From Trichoplax adhaerens (taxonomy: Eukaryota; Animalia; Placozoa), in NCBI RefSeq assembly GCF_000150275.1, contig NW_002060946.1:1512202-1576201 (forward strand): a stretch of DNA of 64,000 bases. The letters are read 5' to 3'. The notes under the pieces are model-generated. The model saw only the letters and a program-made list of their open reading frames with translations, searched no databases and had not been told where the DNA came from. Position numbers and translations under genes: made by a program. Of the stretch, positions 42,401 to 62,985 are shown piece by piece (within the stretch, counting starts at the first letter, position 1; every line of letters starts with the position of its first letter).

Positions 42401-45076
42401 GAGATGTTGCAAATTTGTCTTATTATCGATACTTATTTATACCGATCGCATTCAAAATAAATTTAGTGCAGCTTTACTAGATAATTGTTTGGCTGTTATA
42501 AAGTATTACCGACATCAAATACGGTACACATGTTTGTACATCTCAATGATGATAGCATGATGCGTTAATGCTCACAATTACTCCTGACGTATTACGTAAA
42601 TAAATGTGGTTACCACAAACCTAGTTCCCTGCTGCGTTGATTCGCTATGACTTGATTTGTTTGTCAAGAAAGTGGCCATTTTAGTATGATACGCCTCTGT
42701 TCAACTTTATTTGTTCACGTTAATGCTTTCAAAAAGCGGAACTGATCATGAGGATATATCCTCGAATTTTTACAGGATTCAAACGTTGCCCATTTCTGGG
42801 TCACTCTTCTCGGACACCCTTCGGCATTCCATACATTAAAAGTGCTAAAATCGTTGATGCATCTAACTTTAACAATCAAGGTAAGCTAAGTATAAACTAT
42901 GCAAGTAATGTCTTAAATTATGATGTACGATTTATTATTTGCATTGTTATGGCTAGTTAATATGTAACGTTGTATGAATCTGTGTTATAGCAAGTGCTCA
43001 CATGGAAGAAGTATATTTTTCCGGCGAACATAGTGAAAATTCTTCAAGACGACAAGGATTTTCAAACCCAAATCAAAGACAGTCGGTCGACCATGAATAT
43101 AAAACCACTAGAGGTAAGAATTGTAGTAAATTTCTCGTTTTATCGATATTGTCTAGTTGGTAGTAGTTAATTCTTCTTCATTAGTGGAGAAACAAAATAG
43201 ATCCATATGTACTGTAGATTACTGTAATGTACTGAAAGTATAATTTTTAGCATGCAACTTTGATCAAAATAGTAATTATAGAGTTATTATATATAAAATA
43301 TCTGTATCCGCATTGTACGAGAATCTTTTCATTTGCTAACCAATCTTTTTACGCTCTTTTGAAATAGAGCCGTTATTCAGTTATAATCAATTCTTTAATG
43401 ACCAAATTGAACTAAAGAAAAAGAATCATACGTATCGTATCTTCAAGGAAATTAATCGTTCCGCTACAACATTCCCCTTAGCAAAATGTCATCTTCCTGA
43501 CCAAACTAGGGATGAAATCACGGTTTGGTGTAGCAATGATTACTTAGGACTGAGTCGTCATCCGAAAGTTATTTCCGCTGTAACGTATGTAATGATATTT
43601 CAAGTAGTAGCTGTATTCTATAATGATTCATTAAAGCTGCCATACATTAAATGGTGCTAATACACTGTACGATTTATCTTTGTTATTGGATTTAGTGAAG
43701 CTCTTAAATGTTGTGGAACTGGGGCAGGAGGTACACGGAACATCTCTGGAACGAACAGTCTTCATCGCCGACTTGAAGCAGAACTTGCGCAGTGGCATAG
43801 AAAGGATGCTGGACTTTTATTCAATTCATGCTATTTGGCAAATGAAACTGCTATATCTACTTTGGCGCAACAGTTACCGAATTGTGAGATATTTTCCGAT
43901 GCTGGTAATCACGCTTCCATAATACAAGGTAGTGAATTGTGCCTTATGTATAAACTCAATAATAGTACACTCTAATATGCCTCGAAAGATCTTTTGTTAT
44001 CGTTAATGCATAATATTAATATGTTTATCTGAAAACTTTACGATAGGAATTCGTTTGAGTAAGAGTCCAAAGTTTATATTTCGTCATAATGATCCTGAGC
44101 ATCTAGAAGAGCTACTATCGAAATCTGATCGTTGTAAGCCTAAGCTTGTAATATTTGAGTCAGTACACTCTATGACTGGCGATATAAGTCCAATGAAGCA
44201 ATTGTGTGACGTTGCTCACAAGTATGGTGCTTTAACATTCATTGATGAAGTTCATGCTATCGGATTATATGGAGATACTGGTGCTGGTATTGCCGAAATG
44301 GAAGATATTATTGATCACGTAGACTTCATTAGTGGTACATTAGCGAAAGCTGCTGGTAACATTGGTGGTTACATTGTTGGAGATCGTGAAGCTATTGATA
44401 CCCTGAGGAGTTACTGCCCTGGCTTCATTTTCACTACTTCTCTTCCTCCAGCAACCGTTGCTGGTTGCCTAACTTCAGTCAATATTTTAAGGGGTGAAGA
44501 AGGCAAACAACTACGTTCAAGACTTCATTCGAACGTTGCTACTCTGTTCAATAAACTACGAGCAGTTAATATACCTGCAGTCAAGACTCCAAGCCATATT
44601 ATTCCTGTTCATGTGCGTTACTACTTTATAGAGATATAATTACGTCAAAGTGTAGTTCAATTCATCTATCTATAGAGTTAATAGCGATTATTTTATAACA
44701 CTTATTATTTACTATTATTTAGGTTGGGAATGCCGAAGAATGCTTACGTGCAAGTAATGATTTACTTTTGCAGCATAATGTATACGTTCAGTCCATTAAC
44801 TATCCAACAGTCCCTGTTGGTCAGGAACAGCTAAGGGTTACCACAACTCCTCTACATACTGAAGAAATGATGGATTACTTAGTTGACTCAATAAGGAGTG
44901 TATGGAAGCAGCACAACATTCCATTTTTATGGTCCGTCTGTAATAAATATGACAACTGCTACTGTACCGATGAATCAGCAACCGCCCTATGTCGTTACCA
45001 AACATATATTCGATCACGTTATAGGCCATCAAATCTAGCTGGAGCATCTTCGATTAGTATACCTATTTCCGCTTGA
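36422..45076 (+). CDS. ALAS: 5-aminolevulinate synthase (mitochondrial, PLP-dependent)
   Basis: Phase-consistent exons 36422-36617, 41676-41729, 42776-42880, 42991-43113, 43368-43584, 43696-43928, 44047-44612 and 44723-45076. Motifs: [55 protein letters not shown]-Lys [28 protein letters not shown]. Confidence 0.98.
37729..37747 (+). repeat. Short interstitial telomere-like tract (TTAGGG)~3
   Basis: AGGGTTAGGGTTAGGGTTA within the long ALAS intron. Confidence 0.7.
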
Positions 45077-45898: not shown

Positions 45899-48771
45899 TT
45901 ACATCAAAGATTGCCGTAGACGATAAGCGCGTTCTATGTATTGCAGCCGATCTCTTGTGGGGTGGTGGTATTTTCTTCATTTTCTTGTAATTTTTCGGTT
46001 GTCACATCAGCTAACTCATTATTATCTAAATTACATTCAGCCTGAGATCTAGTAGACCTAAAGTTGTCTATGAGCCAATGTATTTCTTGTTGAAGAGAAG
46101 CCATTTCAACACATATATTGATGGCTGCATAATCGATTATAAAAGTAACTGATCAGTAAATGTTCTATCAAGTGCGAAATAAAAGTCTTACTCTTAATAA
46201 CGATATTACATAGGAAAGATATCGTCTAAAACTTCAAATCTAACCTTTTTCAAAGTCTTTTTGGGCGCTCCTCAAGCATGGAGGAACAAGAACACCAAAC
46301 CAGTTCAGTGGATTACCAATTTGATTTGCTTTTTCTTCTTTTTTACTCATTTTCATTTTATCTAAGTCTTGTGCTAACTTATCCACGGTTGTCTTATCAC
46401 CCGATTCCCCTTTACGTCGACGTACTGTTGATTTTATCTCTTCACCGTTCTTCGTTTTTTTATCGTCTATTCTATCGGATATATTGGAACGTAGTACTCG
46501 AAATTCTTCATAATTTGAATCTTTCGATGGACTATAATACAACATTTAAATGCATTCTATTCATTTCAGGAAAGTAAATTTGAGCTGTACACAGTAAAAT
46601 CAGGCAATAATAGCTACCATCACAGATTTAATAAAAAGTAGTGCAAGCATGTTAGTAATGCAGTATTATTACAGTAGACTGTAGCGAAGTATTCAATTAC
46701 AACAAAATAATCTTATAAATTGCATCATAATAGCATATACGGAGCAACTGCACGTGCCTGGATTGTAATCATTTAATAGTCCATGCCCTTTCGGTTGCAT
46801 ATACGTACAAGTTATTGAACAATTTCAATGACTGTCAGCTGCTAAGCTAACAGTAATAAAACATGCTCATTTGAATAGTCCATACTGATAGTATCAAGCG
46901 TACACGTAGTGTCTATCAGGAGAACCAAGTATATTGGCGCCTAAATCTACTTACTAACGTGGACTACTCACTTTTGACAACGAAGTAAACAGCGCTTTCT
47001 GTTCTATGGTACTAATTAGCCGCAGCGGTGATGTAATAGTTAACAAACTACGCACATAGTATAATAAATTTTGGAACATTTTCTAGATAAAGCTCAGTGT
47101 GATATAATCATGAAGAAAACTACTTTGCCGATAAGGATATATCGGTGATGATCTTAAGTACACCATTGCAGTATTTATAAGCAACACGCAAACTTACTCG
47201 ATTACGACACGTGTAATGGCTTCCATGTCTGACGGATACTGCAAGGCAGTAACAGCTTTATTACCCATTGAATAGCGCGCCTTGGACATATTATAGAAAC
47301 CCTAAAACAAGATTTTATTCTCAGAACATGATCATAACAAAGTTTGTACAACCATGTACGACTAGCCAAATAAGGGTTTATCACTCACTACTGATATTTT
47401 GGTAGTCATAAAATTTCAATTAAATGCTAACACTAGAGTTAAGAACAATTTGTAAAAGCTGAATGGACAATGATCATGATATTGACATTCAACTATACGC
47501 GTTTATTGGAGTTAATTTGTATAACTTATCGACCATTTCAAATACGATTACTTTATAATACTGTAAGTACAGTGCTATTGGTACAAGACAATAACTCTGT
47601 CCTCCTATGTTCATAATACCAAAGTAATGATAACGCAGCAGATTCGAGCGAGATTGGCAAAACTGATACTTTAGTACGAGTGAGTATACGAAGACATGGT
47701 GTAATTTACGGTCTATCACTATCTGCATTTTAGTAGAACAGTCTGAGCCATGGTAAATGTAAACGTAGAAAAAAGCAGCGAAGAAATTAGCAACTGCAAC
47801 CATTGCCGTAAGCTAAGTGGTAGTCTGTAGTTAAATTATTTCTAAAAGAATAAAGTTACAGAGTAGGGTTAGCTAACTTAAGGTAATGAATTGTAAGAAT
47901 ATCCATCTGATCCAGTCCAAGAGACTGCCAAAGAATACAACAATAGTTCAATCAATCAATCAATCTATTCAATCTCGAATGCAGAGCGTTATACACCATT
48001 TTAAAGCTTTCGCTACGTAAATACAATACATTTTAGTCTCAATATTGTAGTATTACCATTATTGCTGATATACATAGTATCTATTCATTATCGATTGAGA
48101 CTGTTGTATGCTATACATAAATCAGCAATATTTTCATCCAAGTTGAGGCAAAGTGCTTTCAACTGGACGTATTGCTGAGGTGAAAATCTCCATGTTGCAT
48201 GTTGCATGTTCCTATCTAATGTTTATTAGGTCAGAATATTTGGTAGCCTACTAGTTATTCATGCTGTTGCAATTGGTATGTCAGGATTATAGACTAAAGT
48301 TTCAATTTTGTCGAGTGGGAATGTGTAAGCATTAACTCAACTAAACATAGGATCATATTATTATTGCACTATCAGACAGACAAAACATCATCACAGGACA
48401 TACTTTACTTATCGTGCTGCAATGAATCGTTGTTATTCTATTAATTTATAACGTTAATATCATATCAGGGGTGATCGATGCTTGCAAGCCATGGCTACAG
48501 CATCCAGTCATGACTACTACTAACAGTATCACTCATTTTTGAAGTGCATTTCAGCCATGGAGGTAAACATTGCCAATACAGGATGATTCATTATCCATTG
48601 AAAATGCAAGTTCTATTTCTAGCTATTGAAAGTTCTATACTATCAGTAACAACTTGCCTCTTTTAATAAATTTTCTAATTGGGTCCATTGCTGTATCCTT
48701 TGGTCCAATTTGTTAAATAATGTCAGCAAGGTCCGATCTAAATCGGAGGAGAGCGTGTCTGTGTCCGCCAT
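45899..48771 (-). CDS. CCDC115: CCDC115 / VMA22 V-ATPase assembly factor
   Basis: Phase-consistent exons 48771-48658 (MADTDTLSSDLDRTLL..LENLLKE, GC donor), 47301-47198 (GFYNMSKARYSMGNKAVTALQYPSDME), 46531-46245 (VRRRK..NPLNWFGVLVPPCLRSAQKDFEK) and 46124-45899 (AINICVEMASLQQEI). Matches recalled motifs GWLSLAKARYAMG and DPLNWFGILVPHSLRQAQ. Confidence 0.96.
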
Positions 48772-48995: not shown

Positions 48996-49550
48996 GCATC
49001 ATCCTGGTCATGGCAGAAAGATGTCATGGACTACTGCAGAAGTGTCGATCTGAGAAAAGTTTTATTCGCAGTTTCATGACTATTTGTTGTCCACTGTACA
49101 ATTGTTCAATCATCTGGTCATGGCAGAAAGATGTCATGGACTACTGCAGAAGTGTCGATCTGAGAAAGGTTTTATTCGTAGTTCCATAACTATTTGTTGT
49201 CCACTGTACAGTGTACAATTTGTTCAATCATCTGGTCATGGCAGAAAAGATGTCATGGACTACTGCAGAAGTGTCGATCTGAGAAAGGTTTTATTCGTAG
49301 TTCCATGACTATTTGTTGTCCACTGTACAATTGTTTAATCATCTGGTCATGGCAGACAGATGTCATGGACTACTGCAGAAGTGTCGATCTGAGAAAGGTT
49401 TTATTCGTAGTTCCATGACTATTTGTTGTCCACTGTACAGTGTACAATTTGTTCAATCATCTGGTCATGGCAGAAAAGATGTCATGGACTACTGCAGAAG
49501 TGTCGATCTGAGAAAGGTTCTATTCGTAGTTCCATGACTATTTGTTGTCC
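48996..49550. repeat. Near-perfect tandem repeat, 5 units alternating ~110/119 bp (229-bp higher-order dimer)
   Basis: Unit ctggtcatggcagaaagatgtcatggactactgcagaagtgtcgatctgagaaaggttttattcgtagttccatgactatttgttgtccactgtaca. Alternate units carry an extra gtgtaca; ORF-track starts at 49084, 49194 and 49313 show the 110/119 spacing. Confidence 0.97.
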
Positions 49551-50452
49551 ATAAGCGCTGTACTGTCTGTCTATCCATTGGAATGAAGAGAGGCACATGA
49601 TTGTCATTTCATGGTCAGATCTAGCACATAGATATTAACAGACAGACAAGTAATTGCATTAATCATAAAATGCAAGAGAATGAGTGCTTATGCTGTCTAG
49701 TACTAGTGATAAAGTACTACTGTTATATCGGTTGGATGGATCTTTAACTTTCAACTCTTTAAGGTCACATCATGTCATCATCAATTTGCATGATTTATGA
49801 TGTCATCCTTGACTGCAGCATAGGCATAAGCATCGGGAAATGCAAATGAATGCCATGATCAACTAGAGTATAGGTCGAGTGGAATCCATGTACATTGTAC
49901 AGGACTGTTTAGTGTCTACCATAGCCACAGAACCAGGGACTTTTAAGAAGAGAATGTTGATTACTCCCCTCCCTAAACGCCAAAAAAGCACAAACTTAGT
50001 CCATTTCTGCTCATTCTGCTAGACTCTAATGCAGAGATCGTCCATTATACTGTCAGCTGAGTCAACATACGGTACAGTTCCAAGGAGCAATCAAATAGTC
50101 GACTGGCACATTTGGAGTCTAGGCTAAAACAACAATTTTCGGTCTGTCTCTCTTTCCCTTTTTTACTAGTACCGAATAGCTACATAAGGCATAGTCGTAG
50201 AATGAATAAATAGACCACTGGGTGCAACATCATGGACGAATCCACTCGATACTGTAGATATGGTAGTCCTTGGCAACATACGTGCATGCATACAAGATAT
50301 ATAAAGTACAGTATGTATTATACACATTATGCAGTAAATTCGACATAGTCCACAGCAGAGTATTGGCTAAAACCCCTCAGTACAGGACCATCATCAGCCT
50401 AATATTATCTACTCTCTGCTGCCACAACAAGTCCCAAGCCATCCTTGTTTGG

Positions 50453-51867: not shown

Positions 51868-53249
51868 AATTCTTTTCAACAAGATGGATATGCTGTATCA
51901 GGTGCAATCACTAGCTGCAGTATTACTAATCAGTTTTATCAATTTAGCTAAAATATAACGAAGTCCAAATGTGATCAAAAATCCAATGTTGGAAGTGATA
52001 CAGAAGTCAGACTTGTAAGTTTCTCACTTACAAACTTGTATTGTTTCATGTGCAAATCGTTTCAATCAATGCAATGTTTTATTGCAAACGTGGAAGTAAA
52101 TTCCTATCACCTGTAAATGAAACTTCTGAATATATCCAATCTTCTCTACCAAGCTAGACAACTTTATAAACCTTGTACAGTATATCATTAGTGTATTCTA
52201 TAAATGCGCCTGTAATATACTTATATAATATTCGTGCATAACGTAAACTGTATATACAGCATAAGCCTTTGTTATTCCATGGTGTATTCCTAAATTCTAT
52301 CATGTAACTATTGCTCTGTTAACACATTTTGATTGTAATTGCATCATACTGGCTTGGAATAATCTCAGATACAGATCGCATACCATTCATTCAAGCTCAG
52401 TATGGTGTAGGCTTCGATAAAAAGACCGTACGATTCATTAAGCAACACGATTACATTGAAATACTATTATTTAATTTCATAACTGTAATAAAAATTAACT
52501 AAAAAATGAATGCAAACATAATAAATTGCACAGATTACATTCCCAGATAAACAAATAAATTTATTTTATTTCTTGACTACACCTCTGGACAAGTTTTATA
52601 AACACAAAATTATCTAAATTTATCTTTATGAATTTAGATATATCTGTGTAAACGAAAGTATATCTAAAAATTAAAATATTCATTGCTGGCAAGCATAAAA
52701 CATGAATTTCACGAATAAAATTAGAAAGTTATGAAACAAGCTGCACCGGTTCTAGCTGTCATTTAATATATGATACTCGGCATAGTATACAGAAAGATAG
52801 CATGAAATAAACAACATAATTATATTTGCTTCGACATGCAAGTGCATCCTGAATAAATTATTCATACAACTTTTTAGCCTATTAAAAGAGATCTATAGAT
52901 TTAAGCCTATGTGTATACATCTTAGTGTTTAGGTAGCAATTAATTATTCTTTAAAATTATTTCGTTGTTAAACTTCTATCTGATCTATATAAACATCGAT
53001 ACTATTGTAAAGCCTGCCTCTTATTTATTAATTAATGGGTAGTGTTCTATTAGAAATGGAGCTTTGTAATTATCATTGTAGTACTGTAATAAACATAACG
53101 GGTGAATACGAATGTAGCCATTTATACTTGTTAAGTGATCGATTGAAATTGCATATTTGTGCGAGATAATCTATAGCTTCTCGTTATTATAATATATCGG
53201 TACCTGTATAGTATACAGTGTAGACGTACGAATACTGGCTATCAATATT

Positions 53250-56200
53250 TTATCTATGAATAGGATGAGTGAATGCCATTCGTACTATTTGAGTAATCGG
53301 CTGAAATTCGATACCTCTCTTGCAAAATAAACGATAGCCTCTTCTATATTGTATTAAACTTGCCATCAATACTTCAGTTGTCGTTTCTTCATCAGGTTCG
53401 TTTACTTTAAGATATCTCATAGATAATATCGTAGCGATATAAACTATTGGTGTACTAGCAATAGTTGCATTTAACGATATAAATGACCATTTGTTCGAAT
53501 CCAATAAAACTGTAAATATAAACGTAACAAGTAAACATGTAGTAATTATAATATTATATAAAATTTGCCAAAGATTCAACGATACTTCAGGAGCATAGTA
53601 TCGTATATAATCGAATAGTTCTGAAGGTATTCCAATACACTCACAATCATCGATGTTATTTATTTTGTAATAGACTTGACTTAACTTTACTCGATAGTAT
53701 TCGACCTTTTTATCACTTAAGTGTTGACTAATGCATGCTAGCAATTCATTTAATCCATCATTGTATCCATGATAGAAATAGATATTATAATCGGGCGATA
53801 GTGTTACTTGGACAAAATCGTCATGTAATAGATTATATTGAAAGACGACTTTAGACATTCCAACTACTAATTCATAGTGATTTAATACTACGTATTGTAA
53901 ATATCGTCGAACATAATATTCTATTTGGCTGTCTTGTAACATTTCAGGTAAATCAATTGTTATTATAGGATTGTTAAGATCTTCCGAGACGACGAAATAG
54001 ATTTCCAGCTTTCCTTGTTTAGCAGTTAATATGTCATCGATTTTAGATTCTACACTCTGTTGTAACTTGATAATACGTTTAGGAAGCATATATCCTTTGC
54101 TTGCATACGAATCGATCAATTTTGTAATATAGTGTACATAAGGTATAATAACGACAATGACGATACTAAAGTAAACGGAATGGGTGATAATAAATATCGT
54201 AACATTGATAATAATACGGCAAATGACTTGAAAAGTTAGCCAAAATGTTACTATAGTAATTGTAGAATACAAAAACGCTATGAGAAATAAGATAGGCGAT
54301 ACTATGATATTAAAGCGCTTCAATTCGGAACTTGTAAATAGAAAATATCGTTTTAATTTCAAGGTAAGAACCTCACACATAAATAATGCAATTCGTAGTA
54401 GTTCAATAGGGCCGAAAATAAAGAAGGGTAGACAAACTAGGAGCGTAAGTAGACCCTTAATGAATTTCATAAAATGGCAAGACGTTAAATGATTTATAAT
54501 ATCTTTGAGACGAGTTATAAATTGTAGGTGTAAATGTCCAAAATTACTTCGAGTTAAGACTTTATAATTTGATGTTGATAGGGGAAGAAGACGCTGATAC
54601 GATGATGAGTTAGTTAACCAGAATTGTTTTAGATGGGCTAATATTATAATTAAGGTACAAAAACAATGAATACCCCCGAAAATTGATAGCCAAAATCTAA
54701 TCTCGTAGAGCATAGATAGAGGCTGCACAGCGGGTAAAATCATGAAGAAAGGAGGAAATATTTGTAAACCAATAGAAATGAATGTTCCAGTAAATCCAGC
54801 AAAGAATAATAGAATATAAATTAAGCTGCATTGGATTTGTAGCCAACGATTTTTGCTAGAACCGGTAGTTTCTCGGAGATAGAAATATCCGACTGTCTGC
54901 AACTTTACTTGGTTCAAAACAGAAACGCTAACTGAATCAATTTCCGTATTCCTAACAATAAACATATAACAGTTGTCAGCAATAAGGAGCCGATTTGTAG
55001 CTATCAAAATTTTTATCGTTTTCATTACACAGATTTGATTTGTATATCGTTGCATTACTATTCCTTACAACAGGAACAAAAGTTATGCATAAAAAGTATA
55101 TAATGTGTTAAAGCTTGTACCTTTTGTTAATAATATTTAGAAGACATACTATTCGAAGTCATAAAATACACATGGAAGTATTTTGGCGATTTTAAATGCA
55201 AAGAATTTGGATTTAATGGATTTTATAGCTTAGTCACTACTAAATGTTAATCTTTCTATTGATTTTAGCTCATTTTGTAGTGTACAAATAGATTCATCAA
55301 AATAGAACTACTTTAAAAATAAGATGTGACAATAAAATCATCACATACAATATCTACAAATTTACCCTAAAATTATCCATCAATTCGCTTCGAATCATTG
55401 CACTTAATATAGCTAAATTGAATTTACTAATCTCTAAATATTGAATCCAGAGCCGTACTTAGCATGTTTTTTATCAGATACTGAAGCGTATCAGGCTAGA
55501 AATTGTTGACATGAAATTATGGAATTTTCCATCACGCAAAGGGAAAATCTAAAATTACACCGCTGTACATGATATATATAGTACATGCCTGTGTCTAAAA
55601 ATATCACAGATCATGTTTCTAATTTCATAGCTGCTAGGTTTTATGTATTTTTGGGATAGTATTTTGTAAAATTACGTTATACTAACATAAAATTAAATAC
55701 CATTGCTGATGATAAGGACTTACTTTTCTAGGGTGTCCAGATAGGAACTAATAACTTTAGCCAATATATTTCCACCCAAAACTGTGCTCAAAATAATAGT
55801 AAATATCCTCATTATTGGCACATACCATGCGATAGTTTGAGGTTTTAAACATTTGTTAATATTAATCTCGGAATCTGATTCTTTATATTCACAACATGAA
55901 TAATCAGCTGTACCAAGATCACTTGTTTTATTCTTTAAAAAGTTTCTTCTGCATAAAGAGCCACTTTTTTCGCTAGAACTATTTTTACTATTATTTGATC
56001 GAATTAATTGAACCAAAGTTTTAAACACAATCAATTCTCGACAAGTATCATTAGCATGTATATAACAGCCTTCAGGAGATTCCATAACATGGACTTGTAG
56101 AGAAGATGCAAAGATCACGTATAGACTTAAGCTCGTAGTAATATAATCACTGGGTAATGCAAAAATAGCCCGGCCATAATCATTTCTTAACCACGCATAA

Positions 56201-56466
56201 AATGTACCCTGTTCTTCATGTCGGGGTCGAATGGGTTGACTGTCGTTTTCTTTACATAGGTAGAAAAACACAACGCGGATCGATGGAGATTTAATTTTAT
56301 TCTTGAAGTTGTTATATGTTTGAGTTTCTTCTAATATGCTTAATTGGCAATTAGAATAGCATTGGTGATCGTCAATATTATCAGAATTGACGTAGTGAAC
56401 GAATATAAATAGGCATAAAGTGGATAACCAAACAGATATCCTAAAGGAATTGGATTTGTAACCCAT
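53250..56466 (-). CDS. Uncharacterised multipass membrane protein, paralogue A (~814 aa, two exons)
   Basis: Exon 1 56466-55724 (signal peptide, Cys-rich ectodomain, TM1; donor AA|gtaagt) splices in phase 2 to exon 2 54951-53250 (ttag|G AAT), giving an intact 815-codon frame with ~7 further hydrophobic segments. Confidence 0.9.
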
Positions 56467-59400
56467 CGGACGAACTAGCGTAAGCTAAATCGTGAAATCA
56501 ATATAGAATGGATTTAGAGATGAGTAAATTTTACTATATTCTACTGATATGACTAAGTTGCTTCAAAAATGTAATACCTTCTAAACTTGGTAGGTGTAGT
56601 GTTTGGGTATTACAACCCCTTAGGTTCGTATTCGTCTAACTCAAAATCTGAGATATTAGAATTGAGCAAATCTCTAATATGACACAACGTGACACAAGAT
56701 TAATAGGTTAAGGTATCTTGATTCAACAAATGGGTGCTGATTCGTTAGTACCCCACTACCTAACACTAAATATTAAATTACTTTCTTAAATAGACGTTAC
56801 CTTTAACGATTGAACAGAATTCGATTTCTATCAATTTATTCATCGATTAAATCCATCTACTAATATCCACTGGTAATGTCCTGTATAATTGTACTGGTAG
56901 GGAACAAGACCTTTGAACTAATTTTAAGCACAGTGGTGAGTCTAACTTGTTTATTATTCTTAGCATTCCTGCAAAGTGTTTTTTTCAATTTTCATACTAG
57001 GCCATAGCGTGAACTGTTTCCAGGCACTGTGGTGTTTTTGAGCTGAATTTGGCAATCAATAAACAATCATGAATGCCCTCAATCGTGACCACATAGAAAG
57101 ACTGCCGTAGCTTGATTTGTCGATGATCCTCGCCAACATATTTATTATTTATTCATTCTTTTTTGCGTCAAGTTGCTAAAGATAACACAGTCCATATAAT
57201 GGGTTATATCTTGTGCCTCTTCTATTATAAAGCATGCCAAATATGATTAGATTTTACAATCTCATCAGTAATACTTATCGTATGGATACACGTATAGCGT
57301 ATTATAAATCAATTTAGATAGTAATATTTCATATGAATTTTATACCTGAAGAAATTGATTTGCGCGTATTAAACTCAATATAATAAATATCACCATCACT
57401 TTGGACTAAAGCAAATGAGTATCCATATAACCACATGCACAGCTCGTGAGAACGGAGATTAGACAGAAATTGTTACGCTATAATTATCAACGCTATGACA
57501 TAATAATCAAAAGGAATTACAGGCAATGATAACATTTTTGTAAAAGTTTTATTTAAGTTTCGATTAACAAAAGATAAATTGCTATTCAATTGATGAAGAT
57601 ACTGTAAATGGATTGGTTGCATTGATAATACGTGTATTAATTTAAAACATCTACGGTTTTAAATATTATCTATCTGATAGCACTAATAACGTTTTAGTAA
57701 GTCTTATACAGCTTGAATTGCTTATCAGATTAGGTTCCAACTTCTTTTAAATCACAAACTGTAAACTAGCTCTTGTTGTTAAAAGTACACAATATTGACT
57801 GTTGGTAATTTATAGGAATGCTTTCAATAAGTCATTGACGTCGATAGTAGTGCTTCAAAAGTGTGTATCAAATGGTCTCTCTTTCTAAATCGAACTATAG
57901 TAGCACCCAGTATCAGCGGAGTATATAGCACTATCTAGTTATTTGGAAGGTCAACGTTATTTATAATAAATAACTTGGTAAGGCCGAAGTTAAACATTTT
58001 GTTTGATAACAGCAATAATTAATCAGTAGAAATATATTGTATTTTGCAATAGCTTGTACTATATTCTTCAAACAAGCCTACAAGTACAGGAATTTTATTA
58101 CAGACAATGTTAAGATACAACATAAAGGATACTACACTAGGTTAAAAGCAGTTACGATGATGCAATTATCAAATATTAATAGCAAAAAATGCCACTTTCA
58201 TTAGCTCTGCGTATTGATTTATTACTGAATCATTTTAAATTATAAATGAAAACTAATACAATCCAGATATTTTAATAAGTTGCTACATTAATCAGGTATG
58301 CTACGGCATAAAGTAGGTACTTGTCATGGCATTAGATCATCGTGATTTATTAGTTTGTAGAATTGATTGGTATACAGTAGATACGGCAGCTTATTATCAG
58401 AGTTATAGTTATAGGCCAGCTTATGTACCCTGCAGTGTTTATACTCAGAAAATATCAATTATTCTGCATACGGTAGAAATAAATGTAATCTTTGCCTATT
58501 TCCATGTTTAGGTTATACGGCTAATGTATAATTTTAGAAATATACCAATACCTATATTGATAATATTTAGAGCGTAAGCTTATGATATAATAGGTGTATC
58601 AATCAGTGCTATGTAGTAGCAGTAGAATCTTTAATTTACATACAGTATAGTGATATGTTATCGGCCTCAGGAGATGTAGCTGTTGTTTAACGGTTTGCGT
58701 GAGTAATGTTACGTAAGAACATGTAAATAGTATTTAAGCTTTTTGCATGAAGTAGTAAGTGGTTTGATAATTTACAGTTTACATATAAGTGGATGATCTC
58801 GATTGTTTCTGCCGTGAAACTTGAGAAAAAAGTTTATAGTTGTCATGGAGAACTGATCTTGAAAAGGAGTTCAAGATATAAAAAGATCAGAGAAATATCT
58901 CTGATGTAGTTTTGTCGCAAGAATTTTGTTTTATTTAAATGTTATAGGATTAATTCCAAAATAAAAGCGTGATGGTGCAAAATAGAACCAAAGACACTAA
59001 TAGCCATTTAATCAGGAACCCAGTATGTAATTAGATGGATTGGATACGTAGATAGCGATTTGAGATTACAATCACAAATACCGAGAGTGTTAAGAAAAGT
59101 TGCTTCCTCTATAATAACTATATAAAAATTTTATATTTTAATACCAATTAATATTAAAGGTTTGATTTTTCTAGGTCCTAAGCATTCTGTAAAAATGCCT
59201 AAGTAAGGTGCTACGTTAGTTAGTCCATTCAATCATTTCCAGGACAGGTTTACTACATACTACATAATATAAACTGGCTATAAGTTGTATTTAATCCTTA
59301 TCTATGAGTATTGATTTAAATTTGCTATTGTAATTAACTGTGAAGACATAAAAGCTAAAATTTATATATATAATCAATACAAGACGACATAAATGTATTT

Positions 59401-59775
59401 AAAAATAAGATACATGGATGATGTATATTTACAAACTATAATCTCACCAAATTAATATCTTGATGGCTTAAAGGGCGTCAAGTTATATATAAACGATTTA
59501 GTGCGAATAGCCTTAAATAACCTAATTACTAGCAGCTATAATCAATAGTGCAAGAATTATATCATGACTCTGGCCATTATCCCTTTAGCAGCTACGAATT
59601 ATGGCCATAATCTTATAGCGTCAAATAAAATTACATTTTATCCGTAATCATAATAGTATGAGACTTGAATTTATCTTATTATATAAATTTCCATACTTGC
59701 CACAATTACGTTTTCTTGATATTATATACCACACATATTACTCTACATTCTAAAAACATATTTAAATTTATTCAA

Positions 59776-62700
59776 TTAAACGCGATACAGAAGCCCATCG
59801 CGAGGTTGGCTGTTGTAATTAATGGCCTCAGCTCTTTCATTTTGGCGATTACGATAAGAAAAAAGGATTCTCTTCAGCTGTTCAAAAGGTTGGAATTCAA
59901 TGCCTCTTGTACAGAAAAATCGATAGCCTCTATGATACTGAAGAATGTTTGTTAGCAGAATCATATCGGCCGTCGGACCAGCAACCTCGGAAATAGTCAA
60001 ATATTTTAATGACAGTGTTGTGGTAATATAGACAGATGGTATATTGGCAGCTGCAGCGCTAATCGTAAAGATCGTCGGCAGATTGGAATCGAGTAGGATG
60101 GTCAAGCAGAAGGTTAGAAATATTCCAGTGGTTATTGAAACATTAAGGAAAACGCGCCATAGATTAAGAGATATTTCTGGAGCATAATATCGAAGATAAT
60201 AAAAGAGTTCTAATGGAATTCCAACGCATGGAAAATCATCAATATTTTCGATCGGATAATAAATTTGAGTCAATTTGCTGCAAAATTCTTCCTCAGTTAG
60301 ATTTTTTAAATGCTCACCAATTGAATCTGTTAATTGACTTAACTGTAAATTACAGCTCTTAGTGAGATAATCTTGATTAAGCTGTGGCAAAGTTACTTTT
60401 ACTTTATCCTCTTGTCTTTCATATTGGAACGTAATTTTAGACACTCCATCGACTAGAGTACGATGGTTAGCCTTAATTAGCTCTTGTAAATTTTCACAAA
60501 TCTGCTGTCTTATAGTTTGTTCATTTAGCATTTCTGGTACATCAATAGCAATATTTTCATCCTTACTATTGCGAGATAGCTTAAAGTATACATGTAGTGT
60601 GCCTGATTTTGCTGTATATACCTCCCGGACCTTTTTCGTTACGACTTCTTTTAATCTAAGAACTTTTTGAGGTATCATATGTTCCTTCCTTCTGTACGCA
60701 TCAATAATTCTGATCACGTAAAACACGTAAGGAACAACAAGGATTATAACCACGCTGAAATAGACAGAATGAGCTATTATAAAAGCTGTAGATGTAATTA
60801 TTACCTTAACCACAAATTGCAAAAATAACCAAATGCCGAAGATGGTCAATACAGAATACATTAGGGCTGCAATAGCAAACAGTGTCGATATTAAGCGATA
60901 CGTTGGTGTTGCTCTAGATGTCGTAGGCAGGAGGTTATTAGCCATATTTAATGATAAGATGTCGGTAATAAATAGAACAATGCGAATAATTTCAATCCTT
61001 GCCAAGATCACAAATGGCAGGCATATAAATATTGAAAAACAAGTTTGGATAAAACTTATAGAACTTCCCGATCTCCAATAAGCTACGGCATCTTTCATGT
61101 AATTAGTAAACTGGAAATGTAATTGTCGATGACTATTACCAGTAAAGCATTTAAATGATTTATCTTGCGATTGCTTGGATCGAATTGGAGAGTTTACGCA
61201 GCAAAATTGCTTCAAGTGAGGCAATACAACAATCGTTGTTAGCAACGCATAGCAATAACCCACGATTGAGACACCGAAGTAGATCTTTCGTGGTATTTTA
61301 ATGTCGTAAATTCTAGGGTGGAACTGAAAATACGCAGGAAATATCTGAAAGGTAACCGACAGTATTGCTCCAGCAAAAGCAATTAATGCCAGTAAAATGA
61401 GCTTGAAACAGTAACCAAGCTGCTTGCATCGACTTTTTTCGTCCAGTTTACGTAAGTAAAAATATCCAATGGCATGAAATTGTAAAGAATTCAAGATCCG
61501 AATCTTTTGAGAGTTTTCTGTGGTTGTTCTATTAAAGTAATTACGTAAATGAAATTAACAGTTAGTAATTTAAAGCGATACTGTGGTAAAATTTTTATTG
61601 AGAAAGAGCGTAAATAGAAATTGCTCAAAAAGCTCGTATAAGAAGTATTTAACGATCTGCACATGTTAACTAGAAATAACCTATTCCATTTAGCTTGATC
61701 GCTGTTGATAGACTACTTAATACAACCTAAATTACAACAAATTTTACCATGTCAGTATCATAGCGCTTGAAGTAGTAAGCTAATCATATTAGAAATCCTA
61801 TACTTTAATAAAATTGTACAGAATGGGAATGGTTGGGCTACTCATTCAGTGTTTTCAAAGTAAATAATGTTACCGGTATTTTACGGCTGATTGCAAGGAA
61901 ATGACTAAATGTAACTATAGTGCTGAAAGTAATCTATACATTCTAATTTATCCCATAGTATCTAAATTTCTATCCTTTGGTTTCTTACCTATGAGAAGAT
62001 ATGCATAACTGATACCCAATAAGTATAAATAATTTAGCGATAGAATTTCATGCTTTAAGTCTTATGCATATACAGCTATTCTGAATCACTAAGTACATAT
62101 GGTAATAATAATTTAATTTTGAGAGATTCTACCTGATAGTACCGTAATCCTGAAATAGCAAAAATTGTAGCTGGATGGATCATGTCAATATAACATGTTC
62201 AATAGGCTATCATTCGTAATATGTAGTATTGTAACATAGCATACAGCACATGACACTTACTTTCCACGAGAGTCCATATAGCCATTGATACATTTGACCA
62301 TAAAGGCTACACTGATTGGGATGCTGATAATAATTGTCAGCATCTGCATATAGGGAACATACCAATCAATTGGCTCGCGCACCAGGCATTTATTAATATC
62401 AACCACAAATTCTATATCATCTTCATTGCAGCATGAATAGATGACAGTAGTAGGATTAGCACCAATTTCTGCAGAATAATTCCTTCTGCAGATAGTACCA
62501 CAAATTGACTTCGGAGGGCATAGACTTGGCAATCGAATAAATTTGGTTAAAGCAGTAAATATCAAATGGCGTCTACATTGTAATGGCAGCGCATTATAGC
62601 AGCCTGGTTTTGTCTCGTTGAGGTTGATGGTGAAATTTTGCGTAAATACCGAGGGTAGACCTAATGTTGAACTCATATAGTTGCTTGATAAGGAGAAAAT

Positions 62701-62985
62701 AGACTTGCCATCCCCTTTTCGAACCCATGCATAGATGATATTTTTCGATTTATTGTAAAGATTTTCGCGCCCGTTATATAAATCAAAGTAGATTACTCGT
62801 GATGCCTTATGGGCAATGACTCGAATAAATTTTCGGTATGTTCTGAGCTCATTTGCGACTTTTAGTTGGCACTCACTGAAGCATTTGGTAATGTTGACGT
62901 CGGTCGATGAAACTTGATGAACGATTGAAATCATCCAAATTAGACTTATCCACTTGGCAACGAAAGTGCCAGATACCAGAGCCAT
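59776..62985 (-). CDS. Uncharacterised multipass membrane protein, paralogue B (~825 aa, two exons)
   Basis: Exon 1 62985-62261 (donor AA|gtaagt) splices in phase 2 to exon 2 61528-59776 (atag|A ACA), giving an intact 826-codon frame. Same intron position and collinear motifs as paralogue A. Confidence 0.9.

What the first reader, a model, noticed from the sequence alone, without database searches (positions are those of the whole stretch)
53250..62985. Tandem pair of orphan receptor/channel-like proteins: signal peptide, Cys-rich ectodomain, ~8 TM helices, conserved loop and tail
Seen: four ORF-track fragments join into two intact two-exon genes with an identical phase-2 intron in a Lys codon just after TM1. 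The ectodomains share 8 aligned Cys and the motifs C(Y/F)S(N/E)CQL, YAW(L/V)R..G(R/K)(A/S)IF(A/S)L, GCY..CR, G(S/T)(L/I)CRRN, YSCC and INKCL..I.WYVP.M. Exon 2 shares GYFYLR, QIFP, HLKQF, CLPF, HSVYFS, ID(L/V)PEML, NIDD..C(I/V)GIP.ELF.Y(I/L)RYYAPE(V/I)SLNLW, LLDSN and QY.RGYR.FC.RGIEFQP. Protein motifs are kept while flanks and introns show no evident similarity, which implies an old duplication under purifying selection. I recognise no GPCR, transporter or channel signature. Inference: a duplicated cell-surface sensor family, with a divergent ligand-binding ectodomain on one exon and a conserved membrane/effector module on the other.
Basis: partly seen in the sequence, partly recalled or inferred. 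Interest (0 to 1): 0.85.

Follow-up and report, generated by a model that had tools for sequence, protein, structure and literature searches.

The report
Placozoan orphan nine-helix membrane glycoprotein genes
Two neighbouring, expressed genes of the nerveless animal Trichoplax encode large multi-pass surface glycoproteins from a family of at least 25 genes seen only in placozoan-like sequence; they match no characterised protein family or solved fold, so a role in surface sensing is likely but untested.

Summary
Two paralogous genes lie on the minus strand. Each has two coding exons joined by a phase-2 GT..AG intron in a Lys codon just after the first membrane helix. RNA-derived contigs from three studies carry gene A's junction exactly as predicted. 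A public Trichoplax sp. H2 protein uses gene B's junction.

Corrections:
- Gene A also has a non-coding 5' exon.
- The proteins have about nine membrane helices.
- The "pair" is the start of a five-gene array with dead copies.
- The family has at least 25 genes in this genome.

Paralogues evolve under purifying selection, slightly weaker on the ectodomain.

Best reading, by inference: a lineage-specific surface receptor family that signals through a conserved membrane and cytoplasmic module.

This scan already reported the same family on other DNA (s1-769869, s1-788050), with the same conclusion.

The parts
56578..56841 (-). Gene A non-coding 5' exon (upstream end not fixed; contigs end at 56825-56841)
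   Evidence: Contigs of X6, X7 and X12 join 56484|56578. An in-frame TAG lies before the ATG.
56485..56577 (-). Gene A 5'UTR intron, 93 nt, GT..AG
   Evidence: Joint 'skips 93, CT..AC' in three runs. Sequence read.
55724..56484 (-). Gene A first coding exon: 18 nt of leader and the ATG at 56466. Encodes the signal peptide, the Cys-rich ectodomain and TM1. Ends with 2 bases of a Lys codon.
54952..55723 (-). Gene A intron, 772 nt, phase 2, GTAAGT..AG
   Evidence: Sequence read. Joint in contigs of X6, X7 and X12.
53250..54951 (-). Gene A second coding exon (stop at 53250-53252): membrane module, cytoplasmic alpha/beta domain and tail. The 3'UTR runs on below 53100.
62261..62985 (-). Gene B first coding exon: signal peptide 62911-62985, ectodomain 62362-62910, TM1 62266-62361
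   Evidence: Residue ranges come from the AlphaFold models and hydropathy.
61529..62260 (-). Gene B intron, 732 nt, phase 2, GTAAGT..AG
   Evidence: Sequence read. The same junction is used in public protein P0001.
59776..61528 (-). Gene B second coding exon (stop at 59776-59778)
60655..61431 (-). Gene B membrane helices 2-7 (residues 275-533). Family-wide conserved polar residues here: Q303, E/D431, Q479, R/K483. Conserved prolines: P413, P508.
60163..60654 (-). Gene B alpha/beta domain (residues 534-697), predicted cytoplasmic. It holds the invariant D571 and P573, and P680 just before the next membrane helix.
59779..60162 (-). Gene B last two membrane helices (residues 698-751) and basic C-terminal tail with invariant G776, Y777, F780 and G784

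Best explanation
Shown:
- Genes A and B are intact, old tandem duplicates in a placozoan-restricted multigene family. Gene A is shown to be transcribed and spliced.
- Each encodes a protein of about 815-825 residues.

Predicted layout:
- A cleavable signal peptide.
- An N-glycosylated, disulfide-rich extracellular alpha/beta domain of about 180 residues with no known fold relative.
- A first membrane helix, followed by the conserved intron.
- About eight further membrane helices carrying a conserved polar set (Gln in helix 2, Glu/Asp in helix 5, and Gln plus Arg/Lys one turn apart in helix 6).
- A roughly 160-residue alpha/beta domain, predicted cytoplasmic, between helices 7 and 8.
- A basic, highly conserved cytoplasmic tail.

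Inferred function:
- They act as cell-surface receptors. The ectodomain binds an external ligand.
- The change is passed through the membrane bundle to the cytoplasmic assembly of juxtamembrane hairpin, alpha/beta domain and tail.
- The output could be an intracellular partner or an ion path lined by the conserved polar residues.
- The ligand, the output and the oligomeric state are all unknown.
For: Gene structure and expression:
- Splice sites read. RNA-derived joints in three studies, with intron and intergenic DNA uncovered. Public model P0001 uses gene B's junction.
- The same phase-2 GTAAGT donor, whose TAA closes the exon-1 ORF, recurs in most of the 22 paralogues checked.

Family size and restriction:
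- 57 matches in the genome, in arrays on contigs C1411, C1399 and C1397, with stop-ridden copies and fragments.
- An extra divergent branch on C1323 and C1413.
- Only 40 proteins at E<=0.001 among 1.84 billion. Every hit whose source I looked up and that carries a name is Trichoplax.

No known relative:
- Pfam: none.
- PDB sequence profile: 0 hits.
- Foldseek against PDB: best E 0.11 for the full model and 0.3 for the ectodomain.
- BFVD: none. ESM Atlas: blank.

Models are confident:
- Full length: pLDDT 80.2, pTM 0.75.
- Ectodomain: pLDDT 82.5.

Topology:
- Sequons and Cys are concentrated in the ectodomain. Loops assigned to the inside are rich in K and R.

Selection:
- Omega is below 1 throughout. 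It is higher in exon 1 than in exon 2 in seven of the eight pairs with both values. The exception, L008-L009, is equal at 0.40 vs 0.41.
- Tandem birth-and-death arrays with a somewhat faster ectodomain fit a receptor family.
Against: - No experiment or known signalling motif ties the family to sensing.
- The ectodomain is only slightly more variable than the rest (identity 0.30 against 0.23-0.38). This is weaker than in classic chemoreceptor or immune-receptor families.
- Conserved buried Gln, Arg and Glu would fit a transporter or channel with no sensing role just as well.
- Surface localisation is inferred only from the signal peptide, sequons and Cys. An endomembrane location is not excluded.
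- The parity of membrane helices depends on counting the amphipathic helix 420-441 as membrane-spanning. That helix is poorly hydrophobic in the divergent subfamily.
- A 45-residue hydrophobic helix (450-494) is unexplained.
- The cytoplasmic alpha/beta domain was never folded alone, so 'no known fold' is not established for it.
- The precomputed label PF28478.1 on two members could not be looked up.
Confidence: 0.45

Rival explanations
1. Ionotropic receptor or channel. Several subunits assemble, the conserved Gln and Arg/Lys face of helix 6 together with the helix-5 acid and the helix-2 Gln line an ion path, and the ectodomain gates it directly.
For: - Q303, Q479 and R/K483 are invariant, and E/D431 is nearly so (18 of 19 sequences), inside hydrophobic helices across 21 paralogues.
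- The membrane and tail regions are the best conserved parts.
- From general knowledge: large lineage-specific chemoreceptor families in invertebrates are often ligand-gated channels.
Against: - Oligomerisation was not tested.
- A buried acid-base pair can be purely structural.
Confidence: 0.2
2. Transporter, scramblase or membrane enzyme, for example in the digestive ventral epithelium or in endomembranes. The N-terminal domain is then a luminal accessory domain rather than a ligand sensor.
For: - Nine helices with conserved intramembrane polar residues and prolines.
- A large conserved cytoplasmic domain.
- The ectodomain is not markedly hypervariable.
Against: - Restriction to placozoan-like sequence.
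- At least 25 copies in tandem arrays with pseudogenes. That pattern is unusual for core transport or enzymatic functions.
- No match to any transporter or enzyme family or fold.
Confidence: 0.15
3. Recognition receptors for other organisms or other individuals: prey or biofilm microbes, the intracellular symbionts, or self/non-self. They would evolve under diversifying pressure.
For: - 13 of 14 differences between the window and other strains' RNA contigs in gene A change the amino acid.
- The recent inverted duplicates L013 and L014 differ at 13 non-synonymous and 4 synonymous sites in exon 1. In exon 2 they differ at only 1 and 2.
- The gene arrays show birth-and-death turnover.
Against: - The 13:1 ratio is not significantly above the neutral expectation. 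My own estimate is P about 0.1 against 76% non-synonymous sites.
- Twelve of the 14 differences appear in a contig of depth under 5 (X12), although two of those are also carried by a deeper contig.
- Older paralogue pairs show plain purifying selection.
- No immune-type domain or motif was found.
Confidence: 0.12
4. A very diverged member of a known multi-pass receptor superfamily, such as a GPCR-like or Frizzled/meckelin-like protein with a Cys-rich ectodomain and a helical bundle. The kinship would be hidden by fast evolution and by imperfect models.
For: - The general layout is shared: signal peptide, Cys-rich ectodomain, odd number of helices, N-terminus outside and C-terminus inside.
- The model alignment is shallow, at 36 rows.
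Against: - No Pfam 7tm or other family at E<=1.
- The matches named above are at noise level.
- There are nine helices, not seven, and a 160-residue domain is inserted between helices 7 and 8.
Confidence: 0.08

Closest known systems
Trichoplax 'uncharacterized proteins' TRIADDRAFT_55304, TRIADDRAFT_55305, TRIADDRAFT_60552 and TRIADDRAFT_60900, and Trichoplax sp. H2 TrispH2_011857, TrispH2_001801/001802 and TrispH2_011916
   Same: - Same family, with the same two-coding-exon structure and architecture.
- TrispH2_011857 is gene B's orthologue (99% identical).
- TRIADDRAFT_55304 is 60% identical to gene A over exon 2.
- TRIADDRAFT_55305 is 48% identical to gene B.
   Different: - None is characterised, and no paper in the held library names any of them.
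- No Trichoplax adhaerens protein model for gene A or gene B came up in my searches.
- In H2 the nearest relative found for gene A, a cluster-mate of TRIADDRAFT_55304, is split into two models of 604 and 249 aa.
Lineage-specific invertebrate chemoreceptor multigene families (insect OR/GR seven-helix ion channels, nematode serpentine receptors)
   Same: - Tandem arrays, birth-and-death with pseudogenes, restriction to one lineage, and multi-pass membrane proteins.
- This comparison concerns how the family evolves and, possibly, what it does.
   Different: - No sequence or fold similarity.
- Nine helices, a 180-residue glycosylated ectodomain and a 160-residue inserted domain.
- N-terminus outside, whereas insect OR/GR have it inside (my own knowledge).
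Receptors with a Cys-rich ectodomain on a helical bundle (Frizzled/Smoothened, class C GPCRs, meckelin/TMEM67)
   Same: Signal peptide, disulfide-rich N-terminal ectodomain, then a multi-helix bundle with the C-terminus inside.
   Different: - No Pfam hit to any of them.
- The helix count and the inserted cytoplasmic domain differ.
MHC class I-like alpha1-alpha2 platform (EPCR, CD1d, MICA, HLA)
   Same: Residues 549-660 of the model (two beta-beta-alpha units forming a sheet topped by two helices) align with about 100-106 residues of these platforms at rmsd 3.6-4.3 A. The match recurs across many entries.
   Different: - The domain is predicted to be cytoplasmic and is poor in sequons.
- It was not folded or searched on its own.
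- Treated as a geometric resemblance, not kinship.

Membership tests
This placozoan two-exon membrane glycoprotein family (as defined by TRIADDRAFT_55304/55305 and TrispH2_011857) | Full-length sequence similarity over both the ectodomain and the membrane module | tested here: met
   - Gene B is 99% identical to P0001. Exon 2 of B is 48% identical to P0002.
- Gene A is 60% identical to P0044.
- A versus B: E 5e-140 and 2e-45.
This placozoan two-exon membrane glycoprotein family | Phase-2 intron just after TM1, with a GTAAGT donor whose TAA ends the exon-1 ORF | tested here: met
   Read. The same donor is seen in most of the 22 paralogous loci checked. Gene A's junction is present in RNA contigs.
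G-protein-coupled receptors (Pfam 7tm_1/2/3, Frizzled) | Sequence match to a 7tm profile | tested here: not met
   No Pfam family at E<=1 for any exon piece or full-length relative.
G-protein-coupled receptors | Seven-helix bundle fold | tested here: not met
   [not shown]
Known ion-channel and transporter folds in the PDB (for example insect OR/GR, OSCA/TMEM63, TMEM16, TRP/PKD, SID-1, STRA6) | Structural match covering the membrane module | tested here: not met
   [not shown]
MHC class I-like platform fold | Eight-stranded sheet topped by two helices, extracellular, match clearly above noise | tested here: inconclusive
   [not shown]
Pfam PF28478 (label precomputed on P0004 and on the ectodomain-only model P0046) | Match to the family profile, and knowledge of what the family is | not testable with these tools
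   The accession is absent from the Pfam copy on hand and from the paper library. The label appears. It probably covers the ectodomain, because P0046 is only 228 aa.

The most novel reading that the evidence does not exclude
The family is a new class of animal chemoreceptor or ionotropic sensor invented in Placozoa. A previously unseen extracellular fold would gate or drive a previously unseen nine-helix membrane module with an inserted cytoplasmic domain. That would give a nerveless animal its own repertoire of about 25-30 receptors for environmental or peptide cues.
Probability: 0.25. Interest if true: 0.8.

Novelty: categorically new. Interest (0 to 1): 0.55.

Why it matters
Placozoans coordinate feeding and movement without neurons, and the receptors that detect food, peptides and microbes are largely unknown.

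This family has at least 25 members, is expressed and is under selection. It has a glycosylated ectodomain and a conserved membrane and cytoplasmic module. Neither has a detectable relative among characterised families or solved structures. That makes it a concrete candidate for lineage-specific sensing, and a source of possibly new protein folds.

"New" here means new as a protein family and fold. Whether the function is new is untested. Members have sat in public databases as "uncharacterized protein", so the gain is recognising and describing the family, not the first sight of the sequences.

Tried and rejected
Searches that found nothing:
- Pfam on all four exon pieces and four relatives: nothing above noise.
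- ESM Atlas, whole protein and residues 530-700: no usable hit.
- Profile of exon 2 against PDB sequences at E<=10: 0 hits.
- Foldseek against PDB (full model and ectodomain) and against BFVD: no E<=0.001.
- VIA wide and the VIA second look: only generic helical hairpins, plus the weak MHC-platform-like rows.

Searches that added little:
- A second-round search with an alignment that included the distant unnamed proteins returned fewer hits than the first. The word filter was swamped.
- The ectodomain profile found only Trichoplax and unnamed ENA/Logan proteins.

Literature:
- Searches for eleven gene or protein identifiers and for PF28478: no paper.
- Supplementary tables of the placozoan cell atlas (PMC10580291): the stored, truncated files do not contain these genes. 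The 2018 cell-type paper is not held. So I have no cell-type expression.

Tools and steps not used:
The organisms behind the unnamed proteins (P0003, P0021, P0023, P0029, P0037, P0045 and others) could not be identified.
- Complex prediction was not used. I make no binding claim, and two copies of the protein exceed the size limit unless the membrane bundle is cut.
Gene A was searched exon by exon only. The public protein P0001 served as the full-length form of gene B.
- One script concatenated gene A's two coding exons, only to number codons for 14 variant positions. It printed 20 residues, saved nothing and searched nothing.
Full report
**What is there**

The window is AT-rich eukaryotic DNA. 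It corresponds to contig C1411, positions 1,512,202-1,576,201, of a 105.6-Mb assembly. The best protein hits are Trichoplax sp. H2 and T. adhaerens, so the organism is a Trichoplax placozoan.

- Gene A's first coding exon ends AA|GTAAGT at 55724. Its second begins after an AG at 54951.
- Gene B's ends AA|GTAAGT at 62261 and resumes at 61528.
- Both introns split a Lys codon in phase 2, a few residues after the first membrane helix.

**Is the splice real?**

- I laid contigs of four public runs on window 53100-59099. Three of them (X6, X7, X12), from three studies and one declared RNA-Seq, join 54950|55723 with CT..AC ends and the cut movable by one base. That is the predicted junction.
- The same three runs leave the intron and the 2.2 kb upstream intergenic DNA uncovered. 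The fourth run (X5) covers intron and intergenic DNA and looks like genomic DNA.
- The same contigs reveal a further 93-nt GT..AG intron (56485-56577) and a non-coding leader exon (56578 to at least 56841). The reading frame upstream of the ATG at 56466 hits a TAG in that leader, so the start codon stands.
- Gene B's junction is the one used in the deposited protein TrispH2_011857 (P0001, 825 aa, 99% identical).
- The phase-2 GTAAGT donor, whose TAA terminates the exon-1 ORF, recurs in most of the 22 paralogous loci I examined. The gene structure is therefore ancestral to the family.

**Paralogy**

- A and B share 39% identity over exon 2 (E 5e-140) and 31% over exon 1 (E 2e-45).
- Introns and 1-kb flanks show nothing (best E 0.12-0.24). 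Exon 2 DNA retains one 119-nt patch.
- Synonymous divergence between A and B is saturated. The duplication is old.

**Not a pair but a family**

A six-frame search of the genome with P0001 gave 57 matches.
- The local array continues beyond the window's right end. It holds A, B, a fragment, a stop-ridden copy, TRIADDRAFT_55304, a fragment, TRIADDRAFT_55305, one more intact gene and a last fragment. All are on the minus strand within about 41 kb.
- A second array of about eleven genes lies on C1399.
- A divergent group of six lies 0.47-0.62 Mb further along C1411.
- Two or three more lie on C1397.
- A still more distant branch (TrispH2_011916-like) lies on C1323 and C1413.

I count at least 25 genes plus relics. 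Two earlier follow-ups of this scan, on other stretches of the genome (s1-769869, s1-788050), reached the same count and the same "orphan" verdict. My searches were run independently of theirs.

**Search for relatives**

- Pfam finds nothing for any exon piece or full-length relative.
- A profile of 21 exon-2 sequences (alignment A1) was read against all 1.84 billion representative proteins. It found only 40 proteins at E<=0.001.
- I looked up the sources of ten of these hits. Every one that carries a name is Trichoplax. The rest are unnamed ENA or Logan predictions.
- One unnamed group (P0021, P0023, P0029, P0037) begins at the equivalent of exon 2. P0023 and the two like it carry a large insertion in the alpha/beta domain. 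P0023, the one I tested, is at most 30% identical to any T. adhaerens locus.
- P0003 is 48% identical to the fifth array gene.
I take them to be other placozoans, but this is not shown.
- The ectodomain profile (A3) likewise found only Trichoplax and unnamed proteins.
- Two members carry a precomputed label, PF28478.1. That accession is absent from the Pfam copy on hand. This is a caveat on the word "orphan".

**Structure**

AlphaFold2 was run on P0001 with a 36-row family alignment. It gave pLDDT 80.2 and pTM 0.75. The ectodomain exon alone gave pLDDT 82.5. The predicted elements are:
- a signal helix (7-25);
- an alpha/beta ectodomain (about 30-205);
- TM1 (209-240);
- a short beta-hairpin (243-254);
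- helices 275-304, 322-351, 398-416, 420-441, 450-494 and 496-533;
- an alpha/beta domain (about 534-697);
- helices 698-722 and 728-751;
- a helical tail.

Fold searches gave the following.
- Foldseek against PDB: best E 0.11 for the full model and 0.3 for the ectodomain.
- BFVD: nothing.
For that domain, "no known fold" is not established.

**Topology**

- The ectodomain has 2.36 sequons per 100 residues and 5.1% Cys across 19 paralogues. The juxtamembrane loop, the 352-397 loop, the alpha/beta domain and the tail have 0.4-0.66 sequons and at most 2.2% Cys.
- The stretches after TM1, after helix 3, after helix 496-518 and after the last helix are rich in Lys and Arg.
- This fits N-terminus outside, nine spans, and the alpha/beta domain and tail inside.
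- The weak point is helix 420-441. It is only amphipathic in the divergent subfamily. It does carry a conserved acid (E/D431) that could pair with the invariant basic residue at 483.
- The 45-residue hydrophobic helix 450-494 is longer than a bilayer and is unexplained.
- Conserved polar residues inside the helices are Q303, E/D431, Q479 and R/K483. P413 and P508 are also conserved.

**Selection**

Nei-Gojobori estimates were made exon by exon.

| Pair | omega, exon 1 | omega, exon 2 |
|---|---|---|
| A vs TRIADDRAFT_55304 | 0.35 | 0.24 |
| L012 vs L013 | 0.78 | 0.48 |
| L031 vs L035 | 0.25 | 0.16 |
| L008 vs L009 | 0.40 | 0.41 |

- The recent inverted duplicates L013 and L014 differ at 13 non-synonymous and 4 synonymous sites in exon 1. 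In exon 2 they differ at only 1 and 2.
- Selection is therefore purifying everywhere, and somewhat weaker on the ectodomain.
- Family-wide, the ectodomain (mean pairwise identity 0.30) is not much more variable than the membrane helices (0.23-0.35) or the tail (0.38).
- Between the window and other strains' RNA contigs, 13 of 14 coding differences in gene A are non-synonymous. Twelve of the 14 appear in a contig of depth under 5 (X12), although two of those are also carried by a deeper contig. The ratio is not significantly above neutral, so I list it only as something noticed.

**Interpretation**

Shown:
- gene A is transcribed and correctly spliced, and both genes have intact reading frames;
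- an ancient family-wide gene structure;
- restriction to placozoan-like sequence in very large databases;
- purifying selection.

Strongly indicated by sequence statistics and confident models:
- an extracellular, glycosylated, disulfide-bonded N-terminal domain;
- about nine membrane helices;
- a cytoplasmic alpha/beta domain and tail.

Inferred:
- A role as surface receptors. This rests on the architecture and on the tandem birth-and-death evolution. I give it about 45%.
- The alternatives are a directly gated channel (about 20%), a transporter or enzyme (about 15%), a recognition or immune role (about 12%), and hidden kinship with a known receptor superfamily (about 8%).

P0001, a public protein returned by a tool, stood in for full-length gene B.
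- No step needed referral.

Noticed in passing
window 56485-56841 (-): Gene A has a non-coding leader exon and a 93-nt GT..AG intron in its 5'UTR, seen in contigs of three runs.
   Followed up: yes
window 53705-56091 (gene A coding positions): 13 of 14 nucleotide differences between the window and RNA contigs of other strains or organisms change the amino acid. Twelve of the 14 appear in a contig of depth under 5, two of them also in a deeper contig. The ratio is not significantly above neutral, but it is odd for a gene whose paralogues show omega of about 0.3.
   Followed up: partly
L013:1483-4384 and L014:162-3093 (contig C1399, about 369-384 kb): A recent inverted duplicate pair of family genes. 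Exon 2 is almost identical (3 differences in 531 codons). Exon 1 has 17 differences in 248 codons, 13 of them non-synonymous. This points to gene conversion limited to exon 2 or to accelerated change of the ectodomain.
   Followed up: partly
G000:C1411:1578990-1579490, 1585349-1586542, 1595516-1595692, 1606167-1606361 (beyond the window's right end): Fragments and one stop-ridden copy of family genes lie interspersed among the intact genes of the same array. This indicates birth-and-death turnover.
   Followed up: partly
P0021, P0023, P0029, P0037 (unnamed ENA/Logan proteins): A divergent branch of the family. P0023, P0029 and P0037 carry a 150-200-residue insertion in the alpha/beta domain. 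P0023, the one I tested, is at most 30% identical to any locus of this genome.
   Followed up: partly
P0004 and P0046 (TRIADDRAFT_60552, TRIADDRAFT_55379): Both carry a precomputed Pfam label, PF28478.1, which is absent from the Pfam copy on hand. It probably covers the family's ectodomain, but its description and taxonomic range are unknown.
   Followed up: partly
window 48998-49551: A tandem repeat of a 110-nt unit, 4.8 copies, 91% matches. It carries three overlapping 74-aa ORFs on the plus strand, and nothing else is known about it.
   Followed up: no
window 44055-45076 (+) and 46240-46545 (-): The neighbouring genes are ordinary. There are exons of a class I/II aminotransferase (Pfam E 5e-33) and a Vma22/CCDC115 homologue (E 7e-11). 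Gene A is therefore the first member of the array on this side.
   Followed up: yes
window 53398|54177: One low-depth RNA contig of run X12 joins these two places on opposite strands inside gene A's exon 2. It is most likely an assembly chimera.
   Followed up: no
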